Source: Octopus bimaculoides (lineage: Eukaryota). From it: a stretch of 64,000 bases of DNA. Under the pieces are notes generated by a model that saw only the letters and a program-made list of their open reading frames with translations, did no database searches and was not told the DNA's origin. Each line of letters starts with the position of its first letter. Position 1 is the first letter of the stretch. The stretch lies in the NCBI RefSeq assembly GCF_001194135.2, contig NC_069006.1, positions 164,389-228,388 on the forward strand, given 5' to 3'. Made by a program: the position numbers and the translations under genes. Positions 1 to 61,012 of this stretch are shown here, in pieces.

Positions 1-910
1 CATATCGTAACCATAGTGTTGGTTTTAGTGGTGTTGATCCTAAAGCCAAATTCTCAAAGTATTCCATGTATATATTGGCCATTACCGGTGATAATGGTGA
101 ACCCATAGCTAAACACTCCTCTTGTCGATATACATCAATGTCCATACTGAAGTAGGTAGTTTCTACACAGAAGGTCAAACATTACTATCAAGTTTCTTAT
201 TGGTATACTAGTGCGTTCTTTTAGATGGGTGTCTGTCACTAGTTTATCTTGTATCACCGATAGTGCTTCACCAGACTTATCACATCTAGACTCACCATCT
301 GGTTGGATTCAATGGGGGTATCCTTGATCAATTCTGTGAAATGGGTGGAATTCTTCACGTACGATGTTGACTTTCCTGCTAATGGACTGATTATATCCAC
401 AAGGAAGCAGCTCAGTGGATGACATGCTGAACCTCTACAGCTCCCTATAGGTCTTAATGGAATACCATCCTTGTGAATCTTGGGGAGACCATACATGTGT
501 GGTAGTTTACTGTGGTGTTGAGTCAGTTGTGTGTACTTCATTGGTGTAAAGTGATCCTTGTTCTTGATCAAGATCTGTGACAACTTCCTCTCTGTTTTCA
601 GAGTTGGGTCTTTCTTTTCTTTGCTATAGCTACCATCACTTGCCAGTTTTTCCGAATAGTCAGATTTCTTCATCACCACTGTAGCATTTCCCTTGTCTGC
701 TGGAAGTATTATGATGGAATTGTCACTCTGTAGTCTTGGTTTAGGAAGTTTTGCTTTTTCCAGTACCTGTCTCACTTTCCACCTTAGTTCATCTCCCTGA
801 GCTTTTGGTATCTTTATGGCCATCTCTTCAATAAGGGCTATTATGTCCAAGTATGGAATACACTTGGTGGTTGTTGCAAAGTTGTGATCTTTGTTTAGTA
901 CTGCTTCTTC
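1..910 (-). mobile_element. Penelope-like retroelement reverse transcriptase fragment (frameshifted, runs off the window)
   Basis: ADKGNATVVM, YGLPKIHK..PLRPI and SLDVISL in ORF 254-850. A second frame in 1-200 gives LAMGSPLSPVMANIYMEYFE. These are PLE RT signature motifs. Confidence 0.85.
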
Positions 911-929
911 AGAGCTTTCTAAATGTCAT

Positions 930-5118: not shown

Positions 5119-8100
5119 CTGTAAAAAAGAAAGAAAAACGTAAAACAAAATGGCAGAGTGGAAAGCCTTTTGCATTTAGGAACTGGTCAGATCCAGTCAA
5201 AATATTTCTACCTGCTTCAGGTTCAAACTGCTGGAATCCGGCTAAAATATTCTGTTTTATGTTCAAACTGGGCAAATCTAGCTTCTCACACCTACCCTAC
5301 AATGTCATTCTGAAAATAAATAATTACATCATCATCATATGTCTGTTTACCATGCTGGCATGGGTTGGACTGTTTGAGAGGCTTTGGAAAGCTGGAGAGT
5401 TACACCAGGCCCCACTTGTCTGTCCTGACATGGTTTCCACAGCTGGAAGCCTTTCCTAACACCATCCCCTTTACAGAGCATACTAGCTGCTTATTACATG
5501 CTACCAGCACAGGTGCCCTTTACTTGGCACTGGTATAAATGAACCTTATGTTCGACAGAGCTATCTGAATATCAAAATGTTTAAAGATGATGCCAAGAGC
5601 AATACTTATTTGGCTGCTGAGGCCTTCAACACACAGAAAACAACAACAACTACGACTACAATTTCGAATCAATAACAATAAGAGCAAGAATCTCAACTGT
5701 TGAGGGCAGTTGTAAAGGATGTCTTGGGTAACTTTAACCCCTTCATTGAAATACAATGCCTTTATTTCAATTAATTTTGAAAATAACAAAGAGTTTATTA
5801 AAGTCACTGTGTCATTATTAAAGCTAATGTTTGAAGCATGAATTAACACAGAAGTTTGAGGGTTTTCATTTAAATCAGTTCAAACCCTTTTGTTGTCAAA
5901 TCTCTTTCTTGTTTCAGTCATTTGACTGTGGCCATGCTGGAGCACCACCTTAAAGAATTTTCTTTTAGTTGAAGAAATCGACTCCAGGGTTTATTCTTTG
6001 TAAGCCTGGCACTTAGTCTATTGGTGTCTCTTGCTGAACCGCTAAGTTACAGGGATGTAAACACAGTTGTCAAGTGATGGGTGGGAGGAGAAAAACAAAT
6101 ACAGACACAAAGACATGCACATAAACGCACACATATATAAATAAATGATAAGGGCAAACTACTCTATTAATCCATACCTAAAAATCTTTACATGCTAGCT
6201 ACCTGATAAAATCCTATATAGATTTTTATCTTTGATTATAATATATATATACACACACACATATATATATATACATATATATACATACATAACGGGCTTT
6301 CAATTTCCTTCTACCAAATTCTTTCACAAGGCTATAGTAAGAGATACCAGCGCAAGGTGCCACACAGTGAGACTGAGCCTGGAACCATGTGGTTAGGAAG
6401 CAAGCTTCTCACCACAACAACCACACCTGCACCTTTGTTTAACTTAATTTTGAAAATAAAGAGGAATTTAGTAAAATAACTCTACAATTATTAAGCTTGT
6501 GTTTGAAACATGAATCAATACAAAAGTTGAACGTAAGGTTTTCCTCTAAATCACTTTAACCCTTTTGTTACCATATTTCTGTTGAAACACAGATTTTGTT
6601 TCAATTAATTACAAAAGCAAGAATTTAGTAAAATAATTTCATTATTAAGCTGATGCATGAAGAATAAATTAACATGAAATTCTGCAGAATGGTTTTAATT
6701 TAGATCAGTTTAAGACATTAAGTTTGTACCATGGAACGAAGGGTGGTCTCAGTCAGGTTGGTATCAAAAGGGTTAAACTTGGAGCAGCCCAAATATCTCT
6801 CAGTGAATTTCTTCCAGAGAGAAACAAGGAGAGGTGAATCAGACACCAGTCCTTGATTGGTGCTTTATTGTATCAAAGGACAAAGTTGACTTCAGCAGAA
6901 TTTGAGCTCAGAACGTAAACAGTTGGAAGAAATACTGTCTGCCAGATCACTGCCTTAACAACAACAACAACAACGAGGAGGAGGAGGAGGAGAAGAGGTT
7001 GAAGCAGCAATGTCACAAACCTGAGTGTCTTTGACTTGGAAGTGACGTCCTTTAACTGGTCAATGTCCTTCTGGATTTTATTGATTTCATCTTCCAATTG
7101 ACTCTTGGACAGGTCAACTTGGTGGCACACAACGGAGAAGGTGGAGGTCAGCTCCCTGTTGTTGTGGACGGTGTTGGAAAAAGAGAGTGAGTGAGTGAGA
7201 GGGTATGAGAAAGAGAGAGTGGTAGGGGACGTGTGTAGGCATGTTGTTATGAGGTGTGGAAGGGTGGGGTGGGGCGAGTGGATGAGAGACAAGGAAGGAA
7301 GGAAGGAAGGAGAGAGTAGCACATGTGAATGTGGAGTGGAGGCAGAAGTGAGAGGAGAAAGACAAAGAGAACACTGTGTGTGTGTGTGTGTGTGCATGCT
7401 AATAGCAGCATGTGTGTGTAGTAGTAGTAGTATAGCAACAATAATGTATTAATGTATGAACAGGAGTTGTACTGTACCAGTTTATTTTATATTGTTTTTT
7501 TTTTTAAGGTTGGGTTCCAACCTGGGGCTGCAGCAACTAAGTCCACTTTCCACACCTCTGGGTCACTGCCTCGAGGTTCTGGATACACTCCAGGACAGTG
7601 TCCGTGAGCAAGTTGTCAATGTAAGGGTGCCAATGTTTGCCTCTTCCTCCATCACCATAAACTGGGTTCCACAACACTAATTTGGACGGTTCCAGTTCAG
7701 GTGGTGCATGCAATGACCAGAGTTGCCAACGCTGTCTCTTTACCTGATCTTCTCGCTAATTATCACCAGGTCCTCATAAAAGTATTCATTTGTCATCTGT
7801 TGCTGCCATTTCACATTTAGGGCCCTTGTGTAGCCTGTTTGATAATTTCCTTGTCAGTGTCAGTGTCTATGCTTCACTGATTTGACTGTTGGTGTGTGTG
7901 TGTGTGTGTGTGCATTAAAACATCTGTATGCATGCGTGGTAGTGTTTCAGTGAATCTGTGCATGCGTATGTGTGAGATAATTCACTGGCAATAGGTATGA
8001 AGGGTCAATAGTGATGGCGTCCACAATGCTTCACTTGGTGACCACAGCCGGGACCGGACGAGTGTGTGTGTGTGTGTGTGTGTGAGACTGTGGCTAGCAT

Positions 8101-8362: not shown

Positions 8363-11300
8363 TTTTCTACTACAAGCACAAGGCCTGCAATTTTGTGTGT
8401 GAGTGGGGGGGTGGAGCTAGCCAAGCACACCGACCTCCCCCACCACCACAGTTCTCAACTAGAATCTATTTTGTTGACTCTGAAAGGATGAAAGGCCAAC
8501 CTCAGTAGAGTTTGAACTCAAATTGTAAAGATGGAACAGGTGTTGCTAAGTATTTTTGCCTGGCATGCTAATGATTCTGCCAGCTCGCCCACCTTAATAA
8601 TAATAATAATAATAATAATGGTCTCAAATTTCGGCACAAGGCCAGCAATTTCAGAGGAAGGGCCTCAGTGTTAACCTGATATTTATTTTATCAACCCCAA
8701 AAGGACGAAAGGCAAAGTTGACCTCAACAAAATTTGAACTCAGAACGTACAGATGGATGAAATACTGCTAAGCATTTTGTCAAGTGTGCTAATGATTCTG
8801 CCAGCTCACCACAATAATAATAATAATAATAATAAATAATAATAGTAAAGGTTTCAAATTTTGGTAATAAGGCCAGCAATGTTAAAGGAAGGGAAAGTTG
8901 ATTACATTGACCTCAGGGTTCATCTGGTACTTATTTCATTTCATTTATTTTTAGTGACAGTGGCAATTAAAAATAATAAAAAAAAAGGTTTGTACTTTGA
9001 ACATAAAATGGATTTAAATACCACAATACATTTCATCTGAGTGAAGGAGTATGGCCTAGTGGTTAGGCTGTTGCATTCACAATCACTAGATCATGGGTTC
9101 AATTCCCTGACTGGGCAGTACACTGTGTTTTTGAGCAAAGTACTTCATTTCATATTGCTTCAGTCCCTGCTTTGATCAGGGGAAATGTTGGCCTGCTCAG
9201 CTAGCCAGTGGGATGGTGTCATTCAATTAGCTAAAACAATGCTAAAAGTGCATTGTGACCAGTGATGTGTAACAACATCTGATAGCGTGGTCAGTCACAT
9301 GATCACAATTTCATCTGATGTTCTACAAATCCTCCAAAGAGCCAGCCAATAGCAGGGAATCACTTGGCTGTCACTTCACGAACAAGAATGCATTTCCTTC
9401 ATTTTGAAGGAAACTGAAATTTGATGATGTCTAATATATTTGACTATGGATCAGAAGACTCCAGGTTCTAATGCAGACAAACTCATAAAACAGGGAGCAT
9501 TAGATGCAGGCATGGTTGTGTGACCAAGAAAAACACTTTGGAACCGTGTGATTTCAGGTTCAGTCCCACTGCATGCCACCTCAGGCAAGTGTTTTCTACC
9601 ATGGCTCCAAATCATTGTAAGTGGATTTGGCAGATGGAAACTGTTGACGCCTTTCTCATGCTTGAGAAGACCTGTTGAGTCAAGTAAAACCAAAATTATA
9701 GTTGTGGCACATGAAATTCCATTCCAGTGGCACATGAAATGCATCATCTGAATGTGGCAGATGCTGGGTCTGCCCGACTGGCATGTAAAAAGTGTCATTT
9801 GAATGTGGCTGATGCTGGGTCTGCCCGACAGGCTCCTGTGCTGGTGGCACATAAAAAGCACTATCTGAACATGATCGATGCCGGGGTTGCCTGACTGGCT
9901 CCCGTGCTAGTGGTACATAAAAAGCACTCATTACACTCTAGGAGTGGTTGGTGTTAGGAAGGGCATCCAACTATAGAAACATTGCCAGATCAGATTGGAG
10001 CCTGGTGCAGCTGCTAGCTTTCCAGACCTCAGTCAAACCGTCCAACCCATGCCAGCATAGAAAACGGACATTGAATGATGATGATGGTAAACAGCTAGGT
10101 CAATGTAATACCATAATGGAAAACTTTAATCATCACTAAATTTGACTGATGGTACCAAAGCACCTACATTGCTAGAAATAAGACTTAAAAAACTCTTCTT
10201 AGAGCATTAAGAGTTTTTAACTTATTTCTAGCAATGTAGGTGCTTTGACACCCTCAGTCAAATTCAGTGACGATTATATACATATACATATATACATATA
10301 TATACATTGTTTTATCACGGACTAGATTATTTGACATAGATGGAGAAAGGTAAAATAAGTGGAGTGTAACATACCATTCCTACGAGAACCATGGCACCGA
10401 CTGTGGTGCGAGAGGTGACTGAGGCAAATGTGCTTAACATAGCAACAAGGACTTCACTGGATTGAGATACATCTGTGGCTGCTGGCTGTTGGGATTGTGG
10501 GGTCTGCAAGAGAGGGAGAGAGTGATTAATGGGTAATTAGAGAGAGAGAGAGACGGGGAGAGAGAGAGAGACGGGGAGAGAGAAAACAAGGATAACGAAG
10601 AAAGAGAAAGAGACAAAGAAAAATGAAACAAAGAGGAAGAAAAATGGAGATATTGAAAGAAAGAGAAACAAGAAACATGAAAGAGGGAGAGAGAGAGAGA
10701 GAGAGAAACAATGAAAGAGAGAAAAGAGTATAAGGAAAGAAAGAGAAAGTAAAAGAAAGACAAGAAAGAGAAAAAGACAAAAAAAAAAGGCTGTGTTGAT
10801 ATTTACCGTAATTCCTCCGATTAAATAATTCTGTTTCTTCATTGGCAAGAAAAACCGTTGCATGAGAGCTGTCGGACCAAAAGAGAATCGGAACTCAATG
10901 TCTTCATGGAAGTCAGCACAGAGGTTGCGACAGTCTAACCGATACATAAGCTCAAAGTCCCGGTTTGGGAACGGCAGTTTGTTTTGGATTTTCTCTTTAT
11001 CTTTCAGGAGAGTGGCCATTTGCTCTGTCGGACGTCAACGTGTCAGGTGTCGTGGGATAAGGAACAGCAACGGCAAAATCACAACAAGGATGACGAGGAC
11101 ATGTAGCAGAAAAAAAAAGAAAGATGGGGGGGGGAGAAGATGACAAGATTAAACAAGCTTTTGAGATTTCAATGTGGGAACATCAACGACAGAGGAACAA
11201 ACAAGATAAAACAAATGAGGTGTGTGTGTGTGTGATTCTATCTAAATGGGTGTTGTTTTTCTGTTTAACCCTTTTTGATACCAAAATGCCTGAGACTGCT

Positions 11301-14529: not shown

Positions 14530-17500
14530 TAACCCTTTTGATACCAATCCAGCTGAAACCACCCCTGGCCCTGCAGAACAAATGTCTTGTTTTCACAAGT
14601 TTTGAATTAAAATATTCCACCAAACCTTAGTCACAATTTATGTTCGTAACACTAGCTTAATGATAACGAAGTTACTTTACTAAATTCTTATATTTAAAAT
14701 TAATTAAAAGAAGCACAGAACATCTCAACAGAAATATGGTAACGAAAGGGTTAATAAACATGTACTAAAAAGAATTGAGTGATTCTTCAGTTTAACATTA
14801 AATTGTTTTTATAAATAATTTTACCAGGTTCCAGTCTGATTTGGTACGTCCAGCCATAGTGACCAAACCAAATCAGACTGGAACCTGGTGCAGCTCTCCA
14901 ACTTATCAGCTCCAGTCAAACCTTCTAACCCATGCCAGCATGGAGAATGGATGGTAAATGATGATGATGATCACACACACACAAGTTTCTTTCTGTTCCC
15001 ATCTACCAAATCCATTAACAAGGCTCTGGTCACCTTGCCCAAGATGCCACACAGTGGGATTGAACCTAAGACCACAGTGTTAGGAAGCAAGCTTCTGAAC
15101 CAGACAGCCATGCCTGCGTCTATAGATCAAACATAATAAAGCAACATAAAAAAAAAAGAGAGAGAAAGAGAAGGAAAGAAAACATTAAAGCAAACAAATT
15201 TTCTTTTAGGGTTTCAAATCAGTGCCCTTCTCATCACCNNNNNNNNNNNNNNNNNNNNNNNNNNNNNNNNNNNNNNNNNNNNNNNNNNNNNNNNNNNNNN
15301 NNNNNNNNNNNNNNNNNNNNNNNNNNNNNNNNNNNNNNNNNNNNNNNNNNNNNNNNNNNNNNNNNNNNNNNNNNNNNNNNNNNNNNNNNNNNNNNNNNNN
15401 NNNNNNNNNNNNNNNNNNNNNNNNNNNNNNNNNNNNNNNNNNNNNNNNNNNNNNAAGGAGGTAAGAAGAGTTTTAGTAGAGAGTAGACAGAGTGTTGATG
15501 AGGTGAGGGGGAAGAGGCTGGCTTTTGTTTTTGTTTTTACCTGTGATTTTCTGTCGTGTTTCTACCACTGGTTTGCTCAACACACGAGAGCAACGTCCAT
15601 GCATGTTGCGGCCCAGCATCTCCTCGACGTATGAATACAACTCCTAAAAGGGGGGGAGCAGTGACAGAAACAAAGATTCACGTTACATTCTTGATGTTGA
15701 TGTTGTTGAAGTTATTGTTGTTGAGAAGTCCTGCACTGTTGTTGTTGTTGTTGTTGTTCTAAGTGTTTAGCCCTGGGTTAGATTTGGTCGAGCAAACCCC
15801 AAAATGCTTCTGACGCTCAAACCAGATCAAAAATGTTCAGACCAGCACTGACTGTACCGTTTTTTGATTTAGACATAGTCTATCTAAGACTACACTATCT
15901 AATGCGTCCTCTCTTGTTCAAGCCCTGATCCAGAAGACCTATAATCAAAGGTGTTCCAGTCATGACCATCCCATCATTTATTTAGACATTGTGTATCTTG
16001 GACTACATTATCAAATGTATCCTTCCCTGTAATTAGTCAGTCCTGTGATCAAAGTTGCTCTAACCATGACCGTCCCACCTTTTACATATAAATATAGCAA
16101 GGACCATACAGCATCCAATGTGTCCATCTCCTTATGGTTATTTAGTTCCAGGTCAGCTTTGATACAGCAAAGCTATGATCAAAGACGCTCCAACCATGAC
16201 TATCACATCTTATCCAAAGCATGTTTACTTTTTTTTTTTTTTTTTACGACAGAAAGACAGGGTTTAAGAGAGAGATTTGACTGCTATTTCTAGCAGACCA
16301 TGCAACAACATAAAGATCCCCTCTCTCATCACACACATTGGCTTGATTAACATATCTGAACCTGTGAAATGGATGAACCCCACTTTGGGTCCCTCACCAT
16401 GAAAATATAGCAGTCACTCTACCACAGCTTTGTCAGTAGATTTGGTAGACGGAAACTGAAAGAAGCCCTTTTGTATGTGTGTGTGTGTGTTACTGTCTGC
16501 TTGCTTTGACATTGCTTGATGACTGTAAACGAGTGTCACTGTTGTGCAGGTGGTATCCTTCATGTCCAATCTTCTGTGAAAAGCATTTCTAACATAAGTT
16601 ATTTACATTTGACGGATATTTGTCCTCATCTTGTTTGTTGTTAACACAACGTTTCGGCTGATATACCCTCCAGCCTTCTTCAGGTGTCTTGGGGGAAATT
16701 TCGAACCTGGGTTCTCATTCCTAAGGTATATTTCGATGTTGTTATTATTATTATTATTATTATTCAGGTCACTGCCTGGAATCGAACTCAGAATCTTGGG
16801 GTTAGTAGTCTGTACTCTTAACCACAACACCACAGGCACATGGTGTAGTGGTTAAGAGCACAGGTTGCTAACCCCAAGATTCTGAGTTCGATTCCAAGCA
16901 GTGACCTGAACAATAATAATAATAATAACATTGAAAAATACCTTAGGAATGAGAACCCAGGTTCGAAATTTCCCCAAGACGTCTGATGAAGGCTGGAGGG
17001 TCTATCAGCCGAAACGTTGTGTTAACAAACAAGAGGAGGACAAATATCCGTCAATTGTAAATAATGTACATAATTCCTCATCTCTTAAATATAGAACTGC
17101 ATTTCTAACATGTCTAGTCAAGGAAAAATATTACCTTGCTTGGGAAACAACTGAGGGTTGGTGACAGGAAGGGCATCCCAGTCATACTCTGTCTGACCCA
17201 TGCGAGCATGGAAAAGTGGATGTTAAACTAATTATATACTGGCACTCTGTTGGTAATGATAAGCCCACTCGTGTAATTAACGTGAAAGTGGCCAAGCACT
17301 CCACAGACACGCGTACACTTAATGTAGTTCTCAGGGAGATTTCAGTGTGACAAGACTGGCCCTCTTGAAATACAGGTGACAACTTGTTTTTGCCAGCTGA
17401 GGGGAGTGGAGCAATGTGAAATAAAGTGACTTTCTCAAGGACACACTCAAATCACATCACCACCCCACTGTCTTGAAAAGGAAAGCAATAGAACTGGACA

Positions 17501-20040
17501 AGGTAGCCCTGGTTTGCTAGTGGTCAAGATGGCCAGAGTTAGAAGGTCTTTGATCATTGGTCTGCTTAAGTTAGACCTGACCTCAAGAAGAGCAGGGGCA
17601 AACAGCAGCAGCCCCCCACCACCACATGTAAGGGCCTAAAGTCACTAAGTATGTATTATTCGATAGCCTGTTCCTTTGTTATTGTCATCTCTCAAAGAAA
17701 TGATTTATAAAAGAAAAATAAATAATAAAAATTAGGAAAAATAAAGCATTAAAAAAAAGTGCAACAGCAACAGCAACAACAACAACAGCAACAACAACAA
17801 CAACAGCAACATCATGCAATGTTGAATTATTTTCAAATTAAACAATCCTGCTTCAAAATAACAAAATAATATAAATAATTAAAATAATTAAAATAAAATA
17901 AAGACCAGAACAACAGCAACAACAAGAACTGGTATGTGTACCTAAGTGCACAGGCGCCGGGGATGGCGGGGGGGGCAATAAACAGCAAACAAACAAATAA
18001 AAAAGATGTAGATAAAACANNNNNNNNNNAGTGTGCCATGAACAAACCTTTGACCTCTCTCCTCTTTTCTCCCTCATAAATGGTTACCACTGAATAAGAC
18101 CACTGCCACCAGATGTCTCTGACATATAAAGGTCAAGTCAGGTCAAGTTGGGGTCAAGTAGAGGCAAGTCTGCTTTCAAATTTTAGTGCATTTAGTCAGG
18201 GATGAGATGGGTTTTGTGTATATGGATGAGTGTGTGTGTGTATTTAATGTTGCCTTTTATTCTTTTACTTGTTTCCATCATTTTGACTGAGGCCATGTTG
18301 GAGCACCTTTTAGTTGAAAAAATAAACCCAACGACTTATTCTTTGTCTCTATCAGTCTCTTAGGATGAACCACTAAGTTACAGGGACATAAACAAACCAG
18401 CACAGACATACAAACACACACACACACATATATATATGTATGTATGATAGGCTTCTTTCAGTTTCCGTCTACCAAATCCACTCACAAGGCTTTGGTGAGC
18501 CTGGAGTTATAGTAGAAGACACTCACCCAAGGTGTCACACAGTGTGATTGAACCTGGAACCATGTGATTGGGAAGCAAGCTTCTTACCACACAGCCACAC
18601 CTGCNNNNNNNNNNAATGTGTATATGTCTTTAAAATGTGTGTTTCATGTAAGTGTATTTAAAATGTTTTTAAAGTGATTTTCAGTATAAGTAATGTGCAT
18701 ATTCTTTTAGTCTTTTACTTGGCCATGCTAGAGCACCGCCTTAAAGAGTTTTAGTTGAAGAAATCGATCCCAGGACTTACTCTGTTTTTTTTTTAGTGAG
18801 GTGCTTATCCTATCGGTCTCTTTTGCCGAACTGCTAAATTACAGGGACATAAACACGCCAACATAAATACACACACACATATATAAAGGGCTTCTTTCAG
18901 TTTCTGTCTACCAAATCCACTCACAAGGGATTTTGTCACCCAAAGTCAGAAGGGAAAAAGGGAAAAGGGGATGTTAAACCAAGCGACAAATTATGTCAAG
19001 GAACATTGGTTGGCAGTGGTGATAAAAGTGGCAGGGTGCCAGAGGCATGCGTGTGTGCGCATGTGCATGGGTGCTGCACCAGAGAGCAGTCCAGGTGAGG
19101 GGTCGGAGGTCGGTTGCTTACCTGTCATATACAAATCCATGTTGCCCATCCCTCGAAAGACAGATGCTGTGCAACGGCCAACCATGTTTCGGCAAAGGGT
19201 TGACTCAAGATGGCTGTGAAGGTCCTGGACAGTGGCAATAGTAGGAGTAGTAGTAGTAGTAGTAGTAGTAGTATTGGTGGGAGAGAATAATTGGTTGAGT
19301 TATAGAAGACATCAGAGAAACAGAAAATAGGAGAGGAAGAGAGAAAGAAAGAGAGAGAAGAGTGAATGAGAGGACAATGAGAGAGAGAGAGATGTTATTC
19401 TTTTTTTGCTTTTGTTTCAGTCACTGGACTGTGGCTGTGCGGGAAAACCCACCTTGAAGGGCTCAGTCAAACAAACTGGCCTCAGCACTTCTTTCAGTGC
19501 CTTCTGCTGAACCTCAAAGTTACAAGGACATAAGCAACAAACACTGGTAGTCAAGTGATGAGTGGGTGGACAAGCAAACACACACACACACACACACATA
19601 TATATATGTGTCGAGCTTCCACACAGTTTCTGTCTATGAAATTCACTTACAATGAATTGGTTGGCCCGGGGCTATAATAGAAGACACTTGCCCAAGGTGT
19701 CATGCAGTGGGACTGAACCTGAAACCACATGGTTTGCAAACTAGGCTTCTTAGCCACAAAGCCATGTCTAAGCCTGTACATTATATATATATATATATAT
19801 ATATANNNNNNNNNNNNNNNNNNNNNNNNNNNNNNNNNNNNNNNNNNNNNNNNNNNNNNNNNNNNNNNNNNNNNNNNNNNNNNNNNNNNNNNNNNNNNNN
19901 NNNNNNNNNNNNNNNNNNNNNNNNNNNNNNNNNNNNNNNNNNNNNNNNNNNNNNNNNNNNNNNNNNNNNNNNNNNNNNNNNNNNNNNNNNNNNNGAACAG
20001 GTGCCCCCAGGGCTCGTATATCTGTGGATTCCTATCTATC

Positions 20041-21031: not shown

Positions 21032-21188
21032 TGTGACGGGCTTCTTTCAGTTTCCATCTACCAATTCCACTCACAAGGCCTTGGTTGGCCTCAGGCTGTA
21101 GTGAAAGACATTTGCTCTAGGTGCCATACAGTGGAACTGAACGAAGAACCATGTGGTTGGGAAACTAGCTTCTAACCACACAGCCATG

Positions 21189-24411: not shown

Positions 24412-27400
24412 CGACGACGACGACGACGACGATGACGATGATGATGATGATGAACGACACTGTTTCTATAACAGTGACACCCATTTACAGCTATCATATG
24501 ATGTCAAGAAGACAAAGGGACAACACCACTTCTATACATAGACATACACACAAGACGTGATGGACTTCTTTCTGTTTGTCTACGAAATTCACTTACAAAA
24601 CACTGGTTGGCCAAGGCCTATAGCCGAAGCGCTAGGCCGTGGGACTGCTCTGAAATAATCCCCTGACCTCAGTAAAAAATCCCGTAACCCAAACAAATGA
24701 AATGACAAAGGCTCACCTTCCGTTCCACGTTATCGACCATGTCTTTGATCTTCTCTTTGATGTCTGCAGTGACAATTTTCAGCTGTTTCACCATAAATTC
24801 TAGCTCATTGGTTTTTTCCTCGAGGACCTTTGTCTGATCATCTCTGGAGTCAGCAATGTGGACGCACAGACAAGCGAGCAACGGAGCAGCAGGAAGGAGA
24901 GAGAAACGAAAACAAGAACAAAAACATGAGGACGGAGCCTCAAAGAACTTTCCATAAAACATAGAAAGACGTTTTCTTTAATACAAGACAATCAATAAAC
25001 CAAAACAACTGTTAGAATTCTTACTGCTTGGGGCGAAAGGCTTGGTGCCATTTTGTCTGTTTTTACATTCTAAGTTCAAATGCTGCTGGGGTTGGCTTTA
25101 CCTTTTGGAGTTGATAAAATAAGAACCTGTTGAATATTGGGGGCCAATATAACCAACTTACCCCTCCTTGAAAAATTGCTGACCTTGTGCTAAAATTTGA
25201 AACGATCATTGGGGTTTACTCCGTGGGCTGACCGGCTAGTGGTGATTCTATTTATCATTTTGCTAATTTCTATTATATATCTTCTACATTATTTACTATT
25301 GACGGATATTCATCCTCATCTTGTTTGTCGTTAACACAACGTTTCGGCTGATATACTCTCCAGCCTTCATCACCTGACGAAGGCTGGAGGGGATATATCA
25401 ACCGAAACGTTGTGTTAACAAACAAGATGAGGATGAATATCCGTCAAATGTAAATAATTCCTCATCTCTTAAATATAGAACTGTATATATCCTCTGTTTT
25501 ATCCTTTAATCTGGCAAGATCTCCCTTTCATTGATGTAAACCCCACCTGTTTTGGTTTTTGGTTCGTTTTTGTGTACTGTAACTCATCTTTTGATATTGT
25601 TTTCCATGTCTTAAGCCCTTGTGGCCAATAAAAGAAATTATTACTATTATTATTATTATGAAGGCAGCAGCTAGCAGAACTGTTAATGCACTGGGTGAAG
25701 TGCTTAGCGGAATTTCGTCCGTCCTTATGGTCTGAGTTCAAATTCCGCCGAGATCGAAAGTGCCTTTCATCCTTTCGGGGTTGATTACATAAGTACCAGT
25801 TATGTACAGGGGTCAATGTAATCGACTGGCCTCCTCCCCCACAACTTCAGGCCTTGTGCCTTTAGTAGAAAAGATTATTATTATTAAGGCTGCGAGCCAG
25901 CAAAATTGTCAGCCCACTGGGCAAAATGCTTACCAGCATTTTGTCTGTCTTCATGTTCTGAGCTCAAATTCCACCAAGGTTGACTTTATCTTTCATGCTT
26001 TGGGGATTGATAAAATACCAGTTATGTACAGGGGTCAATGTAATCGACTAACTTCTGCCCTACAAAACTTGTGCCTATCATGGAAAGGATTATTATTATT
26101 AAGATGGCAAAATGGCAGCATTGTTAGAGCATCAGAATAAATGACTTGCAATATTTTCCCCCGACTCTTTACATGCTGAGTTCAAATCCTGCCACGGTCC
26201 AACTTTGCTTTTCATCCTTTCAAAGTCCTCTCGTACTCAAGTGACCCTCACCCCGCACTCTGGTAAATTCCCTCATTGATTTGTTGAGAATAAAGTAATA
26301 ACAGTTGTTGGTTCTAGTAAGGAAGAGACACATACATGGCAACACCAGGAATAAATACTTCAGAACTCCAATTGGAGTTCTGGATTAAAATCTTGTCCAG
26401 GTTCATCAAAATACCAGTCATATGCTGTGGCCACTACAAACTCATTTTTTGTAATTACATTGCAAGTAAAAAAAAAAAAAGGTCGTTAGAAAACTGAAAC
26501 GAATGGCATCCTAATTGACATTATTATCACAACCACCATCATCATCACAATAACCATCACCATCTCAATCACAACAGCCATCACCGTTACAACCATTAAC
26601 ATCTCAACCACCGAGGAGGAGACCTCCTTCGGTCATGGCTGACCAGGGGATTGCACTTAGAAAGTTACCCTCCCAGGCAGAAGTCCGGGCAAGGTTGTTT
26701 ATGGAAGACCAGCAGTTACCCATGCATACCAGCCTCCCCTCTCCGCACCACCGATGTTATCTAAGGGAAAAGGCAAAGGGGCCGATGCAGCTTGGCACCA
26801 GAGATGTTGCAACTCATTTCTACAGCTGAGTGAACTGGAGCAACGTGAAACAAAGTGTCTTGCTCAAGAACACAACACGCAGCCCGGTCCGGGAATCGAA
26901 CTCCCAACCTCAAGATTGTAAGCTTGATGCTGTAACCACTGAGCCATGCGCCTTCACTTCATCTCAACCACCACCACCACCACCACCAACACCACAATAA
27001 ACATTGCTATTGTCACAATGGTAACAACCAACATCACAATCACAACAAATATCATCATCATCATCGCAACAAGCACTGTAATCATAACAAGCAATCATCA
27101 TCACCATCACTACCCTCAACCTCACAACTGTCACCTTTTGTCAGCACCACAACTGCTGTCATCATCACACTCACAACAACCATCATCATCATCAACAATA
27201 CAAATAGAAATAAAATATTCAACAATATATACAGAAGCAAAACTACATATTGCAATGTTAGGGGGGGGGTCCAGGGATTCATTGATGAAGGATGGATTAT
27301 GATGCTATTAGGGAGGAAGACTGATGTCAATACAAGGGGGTAGGGGGTAGGGACACATGCAGCATCACAGAAATATCCGGAAGAAGTTTATTCTGGCATT

Positions 27401-30400
27401 ATTACTACTACTACAACTACTACTACTATTACCATTATTATTATTATTATTATATCACCTTAATATTGATTTCAAATTCTGGCACAAAGCCAGCAATTTT
27501 GGGGGAGGGGTTATGTTGATTATATTGACCCCAGTGTTTGTATCTGATACTTATGTTATTCAATCAACTGTGGAAGGACGAAAGGTAAAGTTGACCTCAG
27601 TGGAGTTTGAACTCAGAATGTGAAAACGGACAAAATGCCACTAAGTCATTTGCCCAGCGTGCTAACGATTCTGCCAGCTCAATGCCTTACAGAATAATAA
27701 TAATAATAATAATAATAATCCTTCACAAGGCCTGAAATTTGGGGGAAAAGGGAATAGTCGATTACATTAACCCCCACTGTTTAACTGGTCCTCATTTTAT
27801 CAACCCTGAAATTATGACAAACAAAGTTGAGCTTGGTGGAATTTGAACTCAAATGAACGAAATGCAACTAACCATTTCACCTGGTATGCTAACGATTCTG
27901 CCAGCTCGTCACCTTAATAATAATAATAATAATAATAATGAAACTAAGAAAAAGAAGCCAGTTCCCCTAAATTAACCAAAATAAAAAGACCAACTGATAT
28001 TTTCTACATATTGTGTAGAATTTACTACTTAAGTTAGAATACTTGTGGGGTTGGAGGATGAGCTATGGCCATGTGGTGGCATTAATGGCAAATGAAATGA
28101 AAATAAAGGCAAACCTGATGAAGAATGCTTTCTGGTCCAGCAAAGAGCTTTGATAAATAATGTCTGTGAGTGTGTGTATACGTGTGTGTGTGTGTGCGCA
28201 ACAGAGCGCTAATGTTTTGAGGGAAAAGTTGGGCATAAGAGGAATTCGATGCAGTAAGAGAAGAGACTGCACTGGTTAGGTCATGTGATCCATATGGCAG
28301 TTGATAGTTGCATCCAGTGGTGCCAATCAAAGTGGCTGGGACTTGTGGAAGAGGGAGACCCAGGAAGACATGGGATGAAATACTGAAGGACAATATCAAG
28401 ACATTGAGCCTTACAAAGGAGATGGTTAAGGACTGAGACATCTGGTGCCCTGCCGTTCTAAAGAAGTCCTGTCCACCATGGAAGAGCAGATACTGGTGCT
28501 GGTGCCAGTTAAAAGCACTCTATGGAGTGGTTGGTGTTAGGAAGGGCATCCAGCTGTAGAAACCATACCAGATCAGACTGGAGCCTGGTGGAGTTTTCCA
28601 GCTTTGGTCACACTGTCGAGTCCATGCCAACATGGACAACAGATGTTAACTGTTGATGATGATGACATATATATGGCCTTCGTGCGGGTGGCACGTAAAA
28701 GCACCCACTACACTCTCTGAGTGGTTGGCGTTAGGAAGGGCATCCAGCTGTAGAAACTCTGCCAAATCAGATTGGAGGCTGGTGTAGCCATCTGGTTTCA
28801 CCAGTCCTCAGTCAAATCGTCCAACCCATGCTAGCATGGAAAGCGGACATTAAACGATGATGATGATATATATATATATATATATATATATTCCTTTGTA
28901 CCTCTGTAATTCAAAGTTCTAGCCATGTTAAATCCTGTGTTGTACTGATTCTGCTTGAGGATTACAGCAAGTATGCGTGTCTATGGAATACTCAGCTACT
29001 TTCAGAGTAAGGTTGCTTGACTGAATGACCAAAACTAACATAGAAACCATTACCATCAAATGGAAGCAGCTAGCAGAATCAGTAGAGCATTGAACAAAAT
29101 ACCTTGTTCTATTTGATTTACCTCCCTTTAAGTTCTATTTATCAAGTTCCGCCGTAATTTGTTGAAACTGACATGAGATGCGTGTGCATGCATGCATGAA
29201 TGTGTGTCCGTCCCTTCCTTGAAGAAATTAGCTGGGGACCAGAACAGCTCCTTCCTACCTTCCATTGGTCAAGCGTTAATCTAGACAAATCTATGCAGAG
29301 AAGGGATGAGTGCACAGCACACAACGTGCATACACTGCACACAACTGAAAGAGAAGAAGAAGAAGAAGTAAGTGCCGACAGTGTAGACCTGCGTTGGAGA
29401 CTTCTTTGATGCACATCTTCCATTACGGTGCGCAAGTTACTGCTGATGTGTTTACCACGTTCTGTGTGTAATTCAAACTTTGTCTTCACAGCAGACTTGG
29501 AGATACATTCCTAAAAGAGAGAGAGAGAAAGAGAGAGTTAGTGAATGGGAGAGGCAGAGAGGGTGCTAATGAGTGGCTGAGAAAGAGGAAGAGAGAGAGT
29601 GAGTGTCTCTTAACAATAACTTATTTATCTATCTTTTGGCAAATATAATTCTCGTCAGCAGTTTTCTGTTCTATGCTGACACTAACTTAGCTACCTGTCT
29701 GTCTATCAACAAATAGAATCCTCGTTAGCCATCTTATATTCTACTGTGTTTTCCCTTTGAATATGATGAATCATAGACTGGGAATCGGAGTGTTCATTTC
29801 AGAATTATTATAAGAGTCCTATTTCATGTACAGTTGCATTTATTTTTTTGCTCTTTTTTTATTTTATTTGTTTTTTTCACTATTAAATATATTTAAGGGT
29901 CTATTACTTAATTGCAAAAATAAACACATTTTTTAGATTTAGCTCAAAAGAGTTTATAATCGTTTTGTTTTCATAGCAATCATGCCAAAGAGAAATCTCG
30001 ATGTCGAGACGGACACAGAAGAAATATTGAACATGAGATCACAATGTTATCCCCTGAACAGGAACACCAACCCATTACAGGGTATACTCATTCAGTCGAG
30101 TGGGGCTTGAGTAATGTGAAATGAAGTGTATTGCTCAAGGAAACAACACAGCCTGGTCAGGGAATTGAACCAGGGTTTTGTGACCACAGGTGCAACAGTT
30201 AAACCACTGGGTTAGTATCAATGCTAAGTAAAAAGACAAAAAAAAAGGGAAATAAAAAAGTAGAAAAGGGGCAATGTATTGACCGTACCTCAAATGTTCG
30301 TTCAAAGTTTGCAAATTCAAATAAACGAACTTGAAAACCTTCCTGTAAGGCACCAACTAAAAACAGAAAAAACGAAAAAAGAAAAAGAAAAAAAGTGAGA

Positions 30401-59150: not shown

Positions 59151-61012
59151 CCCTTTATTTGGCTAATGGGGTATCTATCAAAGTAATTATGTTTCTGCAT
59201 ATAACTTTACCTTGCTCCAGTCTTAACGAAACTGTCCGACGAACAGGAACAAGAAAGTCTGAGTAACAGTTTTTGTGATATTTTTACTGCTTTTTAACAA
59301 AGTATATATATATATGTGTGTGTGTGTGTGGAGAAAGAGAGCGAGAGAATAAGCGACACAGAGAGAGTTAACATGAGAGGTGTGGGATGAGTGCACTTGC
59401 TAGGTATGGTGGCAGGCAATAAGTAAATGAACATCACACACACATAGCGAGAGAGAAAGAATTAGAGAGACACAGAAAGATGAGAAGGAGAAGTAAATGA
59501 GAGGAGTTTTAGAAAGGAGAAATTTGTTATATTTTATTTTATTTGAAGGTGATAGATATTTTAAAAATTAGCCTTCATTTCATCATTTTGTATAAGCACC
59601 AGGAAATTTAATAAGAATTAAATTACAATTAATATATGTGCCACATAAAAAGCACCCAGTAGTCTGTAAACCGATTGTTATTAGGGAGGGCCCGTCGAAG
59701 CAGACAATGGAGTCTGGTACAGCTCTCGGCCTTACCCGGCTGAGGTCAAACCCATACCAGCCAGGAAAACAGATGTTTAATGATGAGGATGATTTTGATG
59801 ATGACGGCAACGATTGTATGTATGTCGTATTTCCTGTTATCCCCCATGGTGGCAAAAATATACTTCCAAAGGTACTCGTCATACGACATGTTCGAATAGA
59901 GCTGATATAGATTTGAATAAAAGATTGGGACAAAGCGAATTATTTCCCTTGAACCATTTCTCTTGGATTATTTCCCTTTGATTATCTCCCTTGAATAATT
60001 TCCTTTCCTTCTAAGCTTCCATACATTCTCTGTGAATGTTTGAAAATACTTCTGACCTTGAAAGGAGGTCACACATTTTGTGTGTGAGAAAGGTCACAGG
60101 TAGGAGAAGAAATAAAACTGCCCCTCCCCCATCCACCACCTTCAACCCGGGGCAGTGGTTTAATACAGAATCTAAGGTTCGTCTGTCTTTACGTTCTGAG
60201 TTCAAATTCTGCCGAGGTCGACTTTACCTTTCATCCTTTCGGGGTCGATAAATTAAGTACCAGTTGTGTACGGGGGTCGATCCAATCGACTGCTCCCCTC
60301 CCCCAACATTTCGGGCCTTGTACCTAGAGTAGAAAAGAAAATAGAATCTAAGGGGTCTTAACTATATACCGCAATATATAAGCGTTACCGTTGTTGCCTT
60401 CTTCTTGTTTAGACCTGATCAGCCAGTAGACGCAAGATCTAATAAAGCGCTCCAGCCGTGACTATCTCACTTTCTTTTGTGATGTACTTTCTATGAAGGG
60501 CGAACTTCATTTTCCAAAGTATGTATGAAGTATGTTGTTCTTGCTGTCGTTGTTTAGCCCCAGGTCAGTCCTGATCCCAAAGTCCTACAGGAAAAGATGC
60601 CCCAAGCTGTTTCTTTTCCCAAGACACAGAAACAAGGAGGATGGGAGGTGGCACTTACACACCTGTACAGCATCCTCTTTGCAGTTCACAAGCATAGGGT
60701 CGTGATTACTTATAGCGTTTTGTCCCAGCCATACCAACCTCGGCCTCTTGGACTTTAGCGTACCCTCCAGTTCGCAATACTAATTTCTATTATATTACAG
60801 GGTTTTTTCCCGAATATAATAAGGCACGATTGAAGAGATATTTGCTTGCTGTTTCAAGCATGAGATCGAGTGACCACCTTAGAAATCCCCGGTGGGGGCC
60901 AGCTGTGACAGCTAGAATGATGTCATCTGCCTTTTATCTTTCATCTTGCACTTGTCGGGTTGAGTTTTGTACGAGAGAGAGAGGGGGGAAGGAGAGAGAA
61001 GGTGAGAGTGTT

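What the first reader, a model, noticed from the sequence alone, without database searches (positions are those of the whole stretch)
16583..17111. Palindromic, TSD-flanked retroelement joining tRNA-type Pol III heads to Penelope-type minimal hammerhead ribozymes
Seen in sequence: a 466 bp foldback (arms 16599-16832 and 16841-17064, 8 nt loop) flanked by a perfect 13 bp direct repeat, so it inserted as one unit. Each arm, read outward from the centre, has an A box (TGGTGTAGTGG; TGGTGTTGTGG in the left arm), a B box (GTTCGATTCC), an (AAT)n tract, a linker and a complete hammerhead. The hammerhead has a CUGA(A/U)GA core, an extra A, a 6 bp stem II, GAA, palindromic ACGU in place of stem III, a GUU cleavage triplet and a 5 bp stem I. 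Established knowledge: Penelope-like elements carry minimal type I hammerheads with a palindromic tetranucleotide thought to act as dimers, and often have inverted terminal repeats plus a short 3' tail. The Schistosoma Sm-alpha repeat is a tRNA-related, hammerhead-bearing precedent, and an extra nucleotide after A9 is tolerated in the CChMVd hammerhead. Inference: this is a non-autonomous, Pol III-driven, PLE-mobilised SINE/retrozyme hybrid. Its two divergent promoters could make two RNAs that pair through ACGU into an active dimer. I do not know of a description in cephalopods but cannot search.
Basis: partly seen in the sequence, partly recalled or inferred. Interest (0 to 1): 0.85.

Follow-up and report, generated by a model that had tools for sequence, protein, structure and literature searches.

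The report
Penelope-mobilised hammerhead SINE, inverted double insertion
This is one old insertion, in an intron of an octopus mitofusin gene, of a short non-coding retroelement: its back end, including a minimal hammerhead ribozyme, comes from Penelope-like retrotransposons and its front end looks like a tRNA-derived SINE promoter, while the palindrome is a by-product of how Penelope elements integrate rather than a device for making ribozyme dimers.

Summary
There is a 466-bp foldback whose arms are 93% identical, flanked by a target-site duplication (TSD). Each arm carries A-box and B-box motifs, an (AAT)n tract and a complete minimal hammerhead.

- The TSD is 12 bp, not 13.
- It does not abut the foldback. 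3 nt lie on the left, and a 9-nt duplicated motif plus a 26-nt "tail" lie on the right.

The hammerhead meets every published descriptor feature of Penelope-like-element (PLE) minimal hammerheads.

A second window copy (25274-25495) is an inverted pair of only the hammerhead and terminus, with the same one-sided tail and a 12-bp TSD. An Octopus sinensis locus shows the same 3' module fused to a PLE 5'UTR and reading frame, inside the same inverted, tailed, 12-bp-TSD structure. PLE mobilisation is therefore well supported, and the palindrome is the known PLE integration signature.

The head is homologous to the abundant octopus tRNA-type SINE head, starting at that SINE's 5' end. A second decayed locus (about 51.0 kb) repeats the head-hammerhead linkage. 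A Pol III-driven SINE is therefore plausible but not shown.

Covariation is inconclusive. tRNA and hammerhead covariance models do not match. The "divergent promoters make a ribozyme dimer" idea is unsupported. I rate this a new variant of a known kind, of moderate interest.

The parts
16584..16595 (.). Left target-site duplication CATTTCTAACAT (12 bp)
   Evidence: Perfect repeat of 17100-17111. The length is set to 12 bp by comparison with copy 2 and L004.
16596..16598 (-). 3-nt filler (AAG) between the TSD and the tail-less end of the inverted unit
   Evidence: The tail-less end in all three TSD-flanked insertions is TAAATAA plus 3 nt.
16599..16832 (-). Left arm: the inverted unit, lacking the first 8 nt of the head and lacking the tail
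   Evidence: 93.3% identical to the right arm; nhmmer E = 3e-82.
16643..16688 (-). Left-arm minimal hammerhead. GACAC CUGAAGA A GGCUGG-loop-UCAGCC GAA ACGU U GUGUU. Predicted cleavage after 16648.
   Evidence: Descriptor hit. The monomer minimum-free-energy fold equals stems I and II exactly, at -13.0 kcal/mol.
16742..16764 (-). Left-arm (AAT)n tract
16778..16832 (-). Left-arm tRNA-SINE-type head. B box at 16778-16788; A box TGGTGTTGTGG at 16822-16832.
16833..16840 (+). Centre CAGGCACA: the 5' leader of the right (full-length) unit
   Evidence: It aligns with the 5' start CAGGCGCA of the abundant octopus SINE consensus.
16841..16911 (+). Right-arm tRNA-SINE-type head. A box at 16841-16851; B box at 16885-16895.
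   Evidence: Motifs match 10/11 each with tRNA-like spacing. Homology to the SINE-X head scores 43, against shuffles of 17.8 +/- 3.2. No tRNA covariance-model or ARAGORN hit.
16912..16928 (+). Right-arm (AAT)n tract: the 5' boundary of the PLE-derived 3' module
   Evidence: In L004 the same tract joins the module to a PLE reading frame.
16929..16977 (+). Linker with a B-box-like GGTTCGAAATTTCC
   Evidence: Conserved in L004. A homologous AGGATGTAGTTCGAATTTC lies upstream of the hammerhead in PLEs of a distant host.
16978..17023 (+). Right-arm minimal hammerhead. GACGU CUGAUGA A GGCUGG-loop-UCAGCC GAA ACGU U GUGUU. Predicted cleavage after 17018.
   Evidence: Descriptor hit. Stem I has 3 wobble pairs. 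The monomer minimum-free-energy fold is a different structure.
17024..17073 (+). 3' terminus ending in TGTAAATAA, plus a tandem second copy TGTACATAA
   Evidence: The family alignment shows 1-2 copies of the 9-mer at the 3' end.
17074..17099 (+). One-sided tail TTCCTCATCTCTTAAATATAGAACTG
   Evidence: Identical tail in copy 2. 96% match in L004, where it also lies directly in front of a PLE 5'UTR.
17100..17111 (.). Right target-site duplication CATTTCTAACAT
25274..25495 (+). Copy 2 of the family. TSD TATATATC(T/C)TCT (11/12 match), ACA filler, inverted arms 25289-25374 and 25375-25457 (hammerhead core to terminus only), and tail 25458-25483.
59029..59190 (-). Copy 3: a decayed single arm (linker, mutated hammerhead, terminus) with no tail
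50952..51040 (-). Copy 4: a decayed unit with the same head lineage (B-box block 20/21) joined by about 20 nt to a hammerhead 5' half that is 23/23 identical to the left arm
51141..51279 (.). Copy 5: a decayed inverted pair of hammerhead and terminus from a diverged subfamily, followed by a PLE-5'UTR-like segment (51137-51095)
20..927 (-). Fragment of an autonomous-type PLE (N-terminal part of the reverse transcriptase, with a DKG motif). It is a candidate partner family, 85% identical to the PLE piece fused to the module in L004.

Best explanation
**What it is.** The locus is a single, old insertion of a non-autonomous retroelement that Penelope-like-element (PLE) machinery integrated.

**The mobile unit.** It is about 267 nt and reads, 5' to 3':
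1. A roughly 78-nt head of the octopus tRNA-type SINE lineage, with A and B boxes.
2. An (AAT)n tract.
3. A roughly 49-nt linker.
4. A PLE-type minimal hammerhead.
5. A roughly 41-nt terminus ending in one or two copies of TGTAAATAA.
6. A 26-nt tail.

Everything from (AAT)n onward is a PLE 3' module.

**Shown:**
- The module is fused to a PLE 5'UTR and reading frame in O. sinensis.
- Homologous hammerheads lie beside PLE reading frames in a distant host.
- Three independent insertions share one anatomy: a 12-bp TSD, one end where the tail abuts the TSD, the other end TAAATAA plus 3 nt, and two copies joined 5'-to-5'.

**Inferred:**
- A staggered GIY-YIG cut 12 bp apart lets both DNA ends prime reverse transcription on family RNA. 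One end primes at the tail and the other at the TGTAAATAA repeat.
- The two cDNAs run toward the RNA 5' end and are joined head-to-head, which produces the palindrome.
- In copy 1 the right unit reached the 5' end of the head. This is what I would expect if the template was a Pol III transcript started upstream of the A box. On this reading the element is a SINE whose partner is a PLE rather than a LINE.
- The hammerhead is inherited from the PLE module. By analogy with published PLE min-HHRs it would cleave only weakly, and only as a dimer through ACGU.
- The truncated copies still span the cleavage site. They were therefore copied from uncleaved RNA, and cleavage is not what defines copy ends.
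- The insertion is roughly 9 million years old. Each arm has diverged 3.3%, scaled with the rate quoted in PMC13282606.
For: **Hammerhead.**
- All min-HHR descriptor features of Cervera & De la Pena 2014 are met.
- The motif has 2 hits in the window against 0 in 300 simulations.

**PLE integration signature.**
- The published signature is an inverted 5'-truncated copy, a 30-40-bp one-sided tail, and 5' truncation.
- It is matched by copy 1, copy 2, copy 5 and L004 9411-10915, which has a perfect 12-bp TSD.

**Link to PLEs.**
- L004 carries a PLE 5'UTR, a start codon and a reading-frame piece joined through (AAT)n to the module, at 85-92% identity to the arms.
- Hammerhead homologues lie next to PLE reading frames in L001-L003. 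They include tandem and inverted arrangements, and a C-G / U.G / U-A series at pair 10.4-11.4.

**Head.**
- It is homologous to the abundant SINE head and includes that SINE's 5' start.
- There is no TTTT inside either unit.
- An independent locus, c4, repeats the head-hammerhead linkage: score 70 against shuffles of 26.5 +/- 4.6. The c1-type B-box block is found nowhere else in the window.
Against: - Only two loci carry the head, in about 80 kb of octopus DNA, and one of them is decayed.
- No tRNA covariance-model or ARAGORN hit supports tRNA ancestry beyond the box motifs and homology to another SINE.
- No intact full-length octopus PLE with this 3' end was seen. The L004 copy is internally deleted.
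- Stem covariation is not above shuffled controls, with a single compensatory pair.
- There are no transcription or cleavage data.
- Repbase and Dfam could not be consulted.
- The GIY-YIG domain of the partner was seen only as a motif (VYSIPC...IYKGETG...EH) and was not confirmed by Pfam, NCBIfam or PDB searches.
Confidence: 0.68

Rival explanations
1. One-off chimera. Only the PLE 3' module, from (AAT)n to the tail, is the mobile non-autonomous unit. During this single integration the reverse transcriptase switched template, at (AAT)n microhomology, onto an unrelated tRNA-SINE RNA and copied it to its 5' end. On this reading the head is a passenger, not the promoter of a propagating family.
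For: - The module is joined at the same (AAT)n tract to two different 5' partners: a PLE reading frame in L004 and the head here.
- (AAT)n tracts attached to other SINEs are common in the window.
- The two arms of copy 1 come from one event, so they count once.
- No further copy of the head was found in L004.
Against: - Copy 4 independently links the same head lineage to the same hammerhead, without the (AAT)n tract.
- No free-standing 'head plus (AAT)n' SINE that could have served as donor was found in 80 kb.
- The head diverges strongly from the abundant SINE-X and is not simply one of its transcripts.
Confidence: 0.22
2. A foldback or MITE-type DNA transposon. The arms are terminal inverted repeats recognised by a transposase, and copy 2 is an internal-deletion derivative.
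For: - A near-perfect palindrome flanked by a TSD.
- Copy 2 keeps both ends and lacks the middle.
Against: - The ends are asymmetric in all three TSD-flanked insertions. One side has a 26-35-nt tail, and the other has 3 nt.
- Single arms occur: copy 3 and L004 10731-10913.
- The arm is colinear with the 3' end of reverse-transcriptase-encoding elements in two hosts.
- The arm ends in a short tandem 9-mer, which is typical of retroelement 3' ends.
Confidence: 0.03
3. The palindrome is itself functional. Either it acts as two divergent Pol III genes whose RNAs form an active trans hammerhead dimer, or it acts as a hairpin-RNA or miRNA-like gene.
For: - Both arms keep intact hammerhead cores and box motifs.
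- The foldback RNA is extremely stable.
- Rfam miRNA models give sub-threshold hits over the centre.
Against: - Headless inverted pairs (copies 2 and 5) show that inversion is produced by integration, independently of any promoter.
- The miRNA hits are far below the gathering scores (57 against 150 bits). I expect hits of that kind from any long palindrome.
- Retention of both cores after 6.7% divergence between the arms is not improbable by chance. My estimate is about 0.4 (inference).
- Published min-HHR dimers cleave poorly.
Confidence: 0.05

Closest known systems
Minimal hammerheads in the pseudo-LTRs of Penelope-like elements (Cervera & De la Pena 2014, PMC4209133; dimer cleavage reported by Lunse et al. 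2016, as cited in PMC6765202)
   Same: - Core CUGANGA...GAAA.
- An unpaired nucleotide between A9 and 10.1.
- A G10.1-C11.1 pair.
- A long helix II (6 bp) and a short helix I (5 bp).
- A palindromic 15.1-16.1 tetranucleotide with no loop 3.
- Location at the 3' end of reverse-transcriptase elements.
- Many dispersed truncated copies. That paper already noted pairs of min-HHRs 100-700 bp apart on opposite strands.
   Different: Here the hammerhead module is preceded by a tRNA-SINE-type head instead of a PLE reading frame. I found no cephalopod example described in the held literature.
PLE insertion architecture (Evgen'ev & Arkhipova 2005; Arkhipova 2006; Craig et al. 2021, PMC8557442)
   Same: 5' truncation, an inverted 5'-truncated copy adjacent at the 5' end, a 30-40-bp tail at one end only, and a TSD.
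   Different: - The carried sequence is a 267-nt non-coding unit.
- The tail is 26-35 nt.
- The TSD is 12 bp in all three cases seen.
Sm-alpha / Sj-alpha SINE-like elements of Schistosoma (Ferbeyre 1998 and Laha 2000, as summarised in PMC2770079 and PMC6765202)
   Same: A tRNA-derived, presumably Pol III-transcribed, high-copy short retroelement that carries a type I hammerhead.
   Different: - Sm-alpha carries a canonical hammerhead that the Rfam model detects and that is active in vitro. It occurs largely in tandem arrays.
- The octopus element has the helix-III-less PLE variant, with no Rfham... no Rfam hit.
- It is dispersed or inverted rather than tandem.
- It carries an explicit PLE terminus and tail.
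Animal non-LTR retrozymes (Cervera & De la Pena 2020, PMC7229834; Li et al. 2026 preprint, 10.64898/2026.07.22.740005)
   Same: Non-autonomous, hammerhead-bearing, and proposed to depend on PLEs. Their sequence is related to PLE pseudo-LTRs.
   Different: - Retrozymes are tandem repeats of about 170-400 bp with one hammerhead per unit. They are expressed as circular RNAs.
- No tandem array is present here.
- A Pol III-type head is present here.
tRNA-derived SINEs with LINE-derived 3' tails, and L1 twin priming
   Same: - The modular build is head, then body, then the 3' region of the autonomous partner.
- Inversion arises through priming from both ends of the target break.
   Different: The partner is a GIY-YIG PLE rather than a LINE with an AP-type or restriction-like endonuclease. 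The inverted copy is a regular feature rather than an occasional one.

Membership tests
PLE minimal hammerhead (min-HHR) | Conserved core C3-U-G-A-N-G-A9 ... G12-A-A14, then A15.1 ... U16.1-H17 | tested here: met
   Both arms: CUGA(U/A)GA, GAA, ACGU, U17.
PLE minimal hammerhead (min-HHR) | An unpaired nucleotide between A9 and 10.1, and a G10.1-C11.1 pair | tested here: met
   An extra A is followed by GGCUGG...UCAGCC. The 10.1-11.1 pair is invariant G-C in 9 of 9 distinct sequences.
PLE minimal hammerhead (min-HHR) | No helix III hairpin; a palindromic 15.1-16.1 tetranucleotide that allows dimer formation | tested here: met
   ACGU in all octopus copies. One distant copy has ACAU.
PLE minimal hammerhead (min-HHR) | Long helix II (6-8 bp) and short helix I (4-5 bp) | tested here: met
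   6 bp and 5 bp respectively. The left-arm monomer minimum-free-energy fold equals these stems.
PLE minimal hammerhead (min-HHR) | Compensatory changes in the stems across family members | tested here: inconclusive
   One compensatory pair (U-A / C-G / U.G). 84% of cells are paired, against 13-55% when the partners are slid. The result is not above shuffled controls with 9 sequences.
PLE minimal hammerhead (min-HHR) | Self-cleavage as a dimer | not testable with these tools
   This needs in vitro transcription of monomer, dimer and core-mutant constructs.
PLE-derived (PLE-mobilised) element | 3' region shared with a reverse-transcriptase- and endonuclease-encoding PLE | tested here: met
   L004 has a PLE 5'UTR and reading-frame piece fused to the module. 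Homologous hammerheads lie just 3' of PLE reading frames in L002 and L003. Caveats: no intact full-length octopus PLE was seen, and the GIY-YIG domain was seen only as a motif.
PLE-derived (PLE-mobilised) element | Insertion anatomy: an inverted 5'-truncated copy, a one-sided 30-40-bp tail, and a TSD | tested here: met
   Copy 1, copy 2 and L004 9411-10915 all show it, each with a 12-bp TSD (definition).
SINE (Pol III, tRNA-derived) | Internal A and B boxes with tRNA-like spacing at the 5' end, and no internal Pol III terminator | tested here: met
   Each box matches 10/11. The boxes start 44 nt apart, as in tRNA positions 8 and 52. There is no TTTT in the 267-nt unit.
SINE (Pol III, tRNA-derived) | Recognisable tRNA ancestry of the head | tested here: inconclusive
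   No ARAGORN or Rfam tRNA hit. There is significant homology to the head of the abundant octopus tRNA-type SINE.
SINE (Pol III, tRNA-derived) | Many independent copies that share the same head-to-tail composite | tested here: inconclusive
   Two independent loci, copy 1 and the decayed copy 4, in about 80 kb. No genome-wide data were available.
SINE (Pol III, tRNA-derived) | Transcription by RNA polymerase III | not testable with these tools
   No expression data were available.
Non-LTR retrozyme | Tandem repeats, each with a hammerhead, that yield circular RNAs | tested here: not met
   Copies are single or inverted pairs, and none is in a tandem array in the window. The circular-RNA aspect is not testable here.
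Sm-alpha-type SINE | A canonical type I hammerhead with a helix III hairpin, detectable by the Rfam Hammerhead_1 model | tested here: not met
   No hammerhead family hit at E<=10, even on a 101-nt slice. Helix III is absent.
MITE / foldback DNA transposon | Symmetrical terminal inverted repeats that directly abut the TSD | tested here: not met
   The ends are asymmetric in the same way in three insertions, and solo arms exist.

The most novel reading that the evidence does not exclude
This would be the first clearly documented SINE class whose autonomous partner is a Penelope-like element rather than a LINE. It has a Pol III tRNA-type head fused to a PLE 3' module (minimal hammerhead, terminus and tail). 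It would be present at very high copy number in octopus genomes and would routinely insert as inverted dimers. Those dimers place long double-stranded RNA hairpins inside introns of a lineage known for heavy RNA editing. It would also provide a natural system for testing trans-mobilisation by PLEs and the role of the minimal hammerhead.
Probability: 0.35. Interest if true: 0.62.

Novelty: new variant of a known kind. Interest (0 to 1): 0.45.

Why it matters
- How PLEs integrate, and what their hammerheads do, is still unknown.
- Short non-autonomous copies with exact ends give unusually clean junctions for inferring the integration mechanism. Those ends here are the tail abutting the TSD, TAAATAA plus 3 nt abutting the TSD, a 12-bp TSD, and a 5'-to-5' joint.
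- If the tRNA-type head does drive transcription, SINE-LINE-style parasitism also exists for PLEs. That would link Sm-alpha-type hammerhead SINEs and animal retrozymes to one helper class.
- Many "unclassified SINE" and "Penelope" annotations in cephalopod genomes may be this composite.
- Its inverted dimers are a ready source of intronic double-stranded RNA.

Tried and rejected
**Searches that found nothing.**
- Rfam at gathering score, and at E<=10 on the region and on 80-101-nt slices: no hammerhead or tRNA hit, only sub-threshold miRNA hits caused by the palindrome.
- ARAGORN: no tRNA.
- Protein-database search with a spurious reading frame that spans the whole arm, hoping to catch other copies: nothing.
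- Two exact-pattern scans of JGI metagenome contigs for the hammerhead: nothing.
- Exact look-up of the window's own PLE reading frame: not on record.
- Supplement search of the PLE paper: no supplementary files held.
- Lunse 2016 and Ferbeyre 1998: not held.

**Searches that missed their aim.**
- Mitofusin exon search, intended to reach orthologous octopus loci for an empty-site test: only short fragments from other taxa came back.
- Extra PLE-homologue loci (L001-L003, L005) came from other hosts and share only the PLE with the window.
- Pfam, NCBIfam and PDB searches did not confirm the reverse-transcriptase or GIY-YIG domains of the PLE reading frames. Domain calls rest on precomputed Pfam hits of homologues and on motifs.

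**Analyses that did not help.**
- RNAcofold did not reproduce the ACGU helix III dimer. I did not expect it to, because nearest-neighbour models do not capture the hammerhead core.

**Ideas rejected.**
- MITE or foldback transposon.
- Functional miRNA or hairpin gene.
- Retrozyme membership.
Full report
**1. The observation**

The repeat finder and BLAST recover inverted arms 16599-16832 and 16841-17064 around an 8-nt centre. A global alignment of the arms gives 209 matches, 9 transitions, 6 transversions and 3 indels, which is 93.3% identity without gaps.

The flanking direct repeat GCATTTCTAACAT is perfect. The A box (TGGTGTAGTGG, and TGGTGTTGTGG in the left arm) and the B box (AGTTCGATTCC) are present. 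Their starts are spaced as in tRNA positions 8 and 52.

Each arm carries CUGA(U/A)GA-A-GGCUGG-loop-UCAGCC-GAA-ACGU-U-GUGUU, preceded by GACAC in the left arm and GACGU in the right arm. A descriptor scan for helix-III-less hammerheads hits only these two sites on both strands of the window. It hit nothing in 300 Markov simulations of 60 kb.

Curated models do not see either part. There is no Rfam hammerhead or tRNA hit even at E<=10 on short slices, and no ARAGORN tRNA.

**2. More copies in the same window change the picture**

BLAST and nhmmer with the arm find four further loci.

- **Copy 2 (25274-25495)** is another head-to-head pair, but only of the last ~84 nt, from the hammerhead core to the terminus. 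It is followed on one side only by TTCCTCATCTCTTAAATATAGAACTG. That same 26 nt lies between the right arm and the right repeat of copy 1. Copy 2 is flanked by TATATATC(T/C)TCT.
- It also shows that the ends are asymmetric. At one end the tail abuts the TSD. The other end is TAAATAA plus 3 nt, then the TSD.
- **Copy 3 (59029-59190, - strand)** is a decayed single arm.
- **Copy 5 (51141-51279)** is a decayed inverted pair.
- **Copy 4 (50952-51040, - strand)** is discussed in section 5.

**3. Link to Penelope-like elements**

The window starts with a reading-frame fragment on the - strand at 20-927. It carries LPADKGNATV and YGLPKIHK..PLRPI. Its homologues carry RVT_1 and DUF8422, and one of them is an Octopus sinensis protein.

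Fetching that O. sinensis locus (L004) was decisive.
- L004 shares many interspersed repeats with the window, so the window comes from Octopus or a close relative.
- At L004 10107-10745 the PLE reading frame is joined directly, through (AAC)2(AAT)n, to the same linker-hammerhead-terminus. Identity to the arms is 85-92%.
- The tail sequence lies at L004 9629-9657, immediately in front of that PLE's 5'UTR.
- An inverted, truncated terminus plus tail lies at 9411-9464.
- The whole complex, 9411-10915, is flanked by a perfect 12-bp repeat AGGGGAAATATA. Its 11-nt core GGGGAAATATA occurs only at these two places in 21 kb.

Three independent insertions therefore share a 12-bp TSD, a tail at one end, TAAATAA plus 3 nt at the other end, and inverted copies. 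One of the three contains PLE coding sequence.

In a more distant host (loci L001-L003, which share only the PLE with the window), homologous hammerheads lie just 3' of PLE reading frames, in tandem, or inverted just upstream of the reading frame. The second reading frame of L002 has a GIY-YIG-like VYSIPCSCVKIYKGETG...EH. Profile searches did not confirm that domain.

**4. Comparison with the literature**

Cervera & De la Pena (2014) define PLE min-HHRs by five features:
- a long helix II;
- a short helix I of 4-5 bp;
- an unpaired nucleotide between A9 and 10.1;
- a conserved G10.1-C11.1 pair;
- palindromic 15.2-16.2 positions without a loop 3.

They report low dimer-dependent activity in vitro. 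They also mention pairs of min-HHRs 100-700 bp apart on opposite strands. All five features are met here.

Craig et al. (2021) describe PLE insertions as highly 5'-truncated. Such insertions often have an inverted 5'-truncated copy adjacent at the 5' end and a 30-40-bp tail at one end only. This is exactly the anatomy found here. The palindrome is therefore the known by-product of PLE integration. Copies 2 and 5 show the same inversion without any head.

**5. The head**

The first ~78 nt of the right unit, including the 8-nt centre CAGGCACA, align colinearly with the consensus of the most abundant SINE in the window. I call this SINE-X; BLAST with one copy finds about 20 further matches in the window, and 15 copies went into the consensus. 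The alignment begins at that SINE's 5' start. It scores 43, against 17.8 +/- 3.2 for shuffles.

The right unit is therefore full length with respect to a Pol III-type SINE head, and the left unit lacks 8 nt. Neither unit contains TTTT.

Is the composite recurrent?
- Copy 4 carries a B-box block that matches 20 of 21 positions of the copy-1 head. No other site in the window or the loci matches that block with 3 or fewer mismatches.
- About 20 nt downstream of that block lies a hammerhead 5' half that is 23/23 identical to the left arm.
- The colinear alignment scores 70, against 26.5 +/- 4.6 for shuffles. It has one ~60-nt gap, which includes (AAT)n.

This second, independent locus argues against a one-off chimera. 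Two loci remain thin evidence.

**6. Structure support for the ribozyme**

On ten hammerheads (six octopus, four from the distant host), 84% of cells pair, against 13-55% when the partners are slid. Only pair 10.4-11.4 shows a compensatory series (U-A, U.G, C-G), and nothing exceeds the shuffled controls.

The left-arm monomer folds exactly into stems I and II. The right-arm monomer prefers another fold. Activity is untested.

Truncated copies extend 5' of the cleavage site. They were therefore copied from uncleaved RNA.

**7. Mechanism (shown and inferred)**

Shown:
- the modular anatomy;
- the PLE origin of the 3' module;
- the shared insertion signature.

Inferred:
- A staggered cut 12 bp apart.
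- Priming of reverse transcription from both DNA ends, at the tail end and at the TGTAAATAA repeat.
- Head-to-head joining of the two cDNAs.
- Pol III transcription of source copies from the A and B boxes.
- Recognition of the module by a PLE reverse transcriptase acting in trans.
- An age of about 9 million years. Each arm has diverged 3.3%, and PMC13282606 equates a Jukes-Cantor distance of 0.09 with 25 million years.

**8. Novelty**

No paper in the held library describes hammerheads or PLE-dependent SINEs in cephalopods. A 2026 O. vulgaris repeat annotation lists 893 recently active "unclassified SINE" families and 31 recently active PLE families, and does not mention ribozymes.

The ingredients are all known:
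- PLE min-HHRs.
- The inverted, tailed PLE insertion anatomy.
- tRNA-derived hammerhead SINEs in schistosomes.
- Retrozymes as PLE dependants.

The explicit combination of a tRNA-SINE head with a PLE terminus and tail is a new variant rather than a new kind. Repbase and Dfam could not be checked.

**9. Verdict**

- PLE mobilisation: about 0.9.
- A true Pol III SINE family: about 0.5-0.6.
- A dimer-generating palindrome: unsupported.

Interest is 0.45.

Noticed in passing
window 6873-7397, 10537-11019, ~31400-31520, 38796-39548, 41259-41657 (all - strand): Reading-frame pieces of a mitofusin gene, including the P-loop [25 protein letters not shown] and a C-terminal coiled-coil piece. The foldback lies in an intron of this gene. 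The pre-mRNA would therefore contain a ~230-bp near-perfect hairpin, a possible ADAR or Dicer substrate.
   Followed up: partly
window 31664-31782 (-): A full-length 5S rRNA match (89.6 bits, model positions 1-120), inside the mitofusin gene. It is followed by SINE-like sequence (..catggccacagtcaaatga..). It is probably a 5S-headed SINE or a dispersed 5S pseudogene rather than a 5S gene array.
   Followed up: partly
window, e.g. 1181-1400(-), 18475-18597, 21066-21186, 38068-38190, 47497-47607, 56171-56287: A very abundant tRNA-type SINE ('SINE-X'), with about 20 BLAST matches in 60 kb. Its head consensus is CAGGCGCAGGCGTGGCTGTGTGGTAAGAAGCTTGCTTCCCAACCACATGGTTCCAGGTTCAGTCCCACTGCGTGGCACCT. The foldback's head is a distant relative of it.
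   Followed up: partly
window 8480-8840 and 27560-27940: Another repeat family (..GTTTGAACTCAGAAT..GCTAACGATTCTGCCAGCTC..) is regularly followed by (AAT)n and occurs in near-tandem pairs. (AAT)n tracts are common junction points in this genome.
   Followed up: no
window 25372-25376 and 51199-51203; L004 9464-9485: Two independent headless inverted pairs (copies 2 and 5) join within about 5 nt of C3, at the 5' edge of the hammerhead core. In L004 the inverted arm ends at GTTAAC, 2 nt after the predicted cleavage site, within a 16-nt perfect palindrome TTGTTGTTAACAACAA. The recurrent junction positions are unexplained.
   Followed up: partly
window 17074-17083 vs 17034-17043; 25458-25467 vs 25417-25426: The first 9-10 nt of the tail (TTCCTCATCT) are the reverse complement of AGATGAGGA in the 3' terminus (8/9 in the right arm of copy 1). 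The RNA 3' end could therefore form a hairpin. The tail's homologue also follows the terminus in PLEs of the distant host (L001 9815-9830, L002 12378-12393).
   Followed up: partly
window 16779-16894: Sub-threshold Rfam miRNA-precursor hits (MIR5380 at 57 bits against a gathering score of 150; mir-885 at 31 against 66) lie over the palindrome centre. They are artefacts of a long inverted repeat.
   Followed up: yes
window 16976-16983: In the right arm, the two substitutions that weaken stem I create an 8-nt perfect palindrome AGACGUCU. RNAcofold uses it for an alternative, non-hammerhead dimer.
   Followed up: no
window: 20 N runs (10 to 919 nt), e.g. 1832-2207, 56376-57294: Many assembly gaps of variable size, often next to microsatellites. 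The window comes from a scaffolded short-read-type assembly, and further repeat copies may be hidden in the gaps.
   Followed up: no
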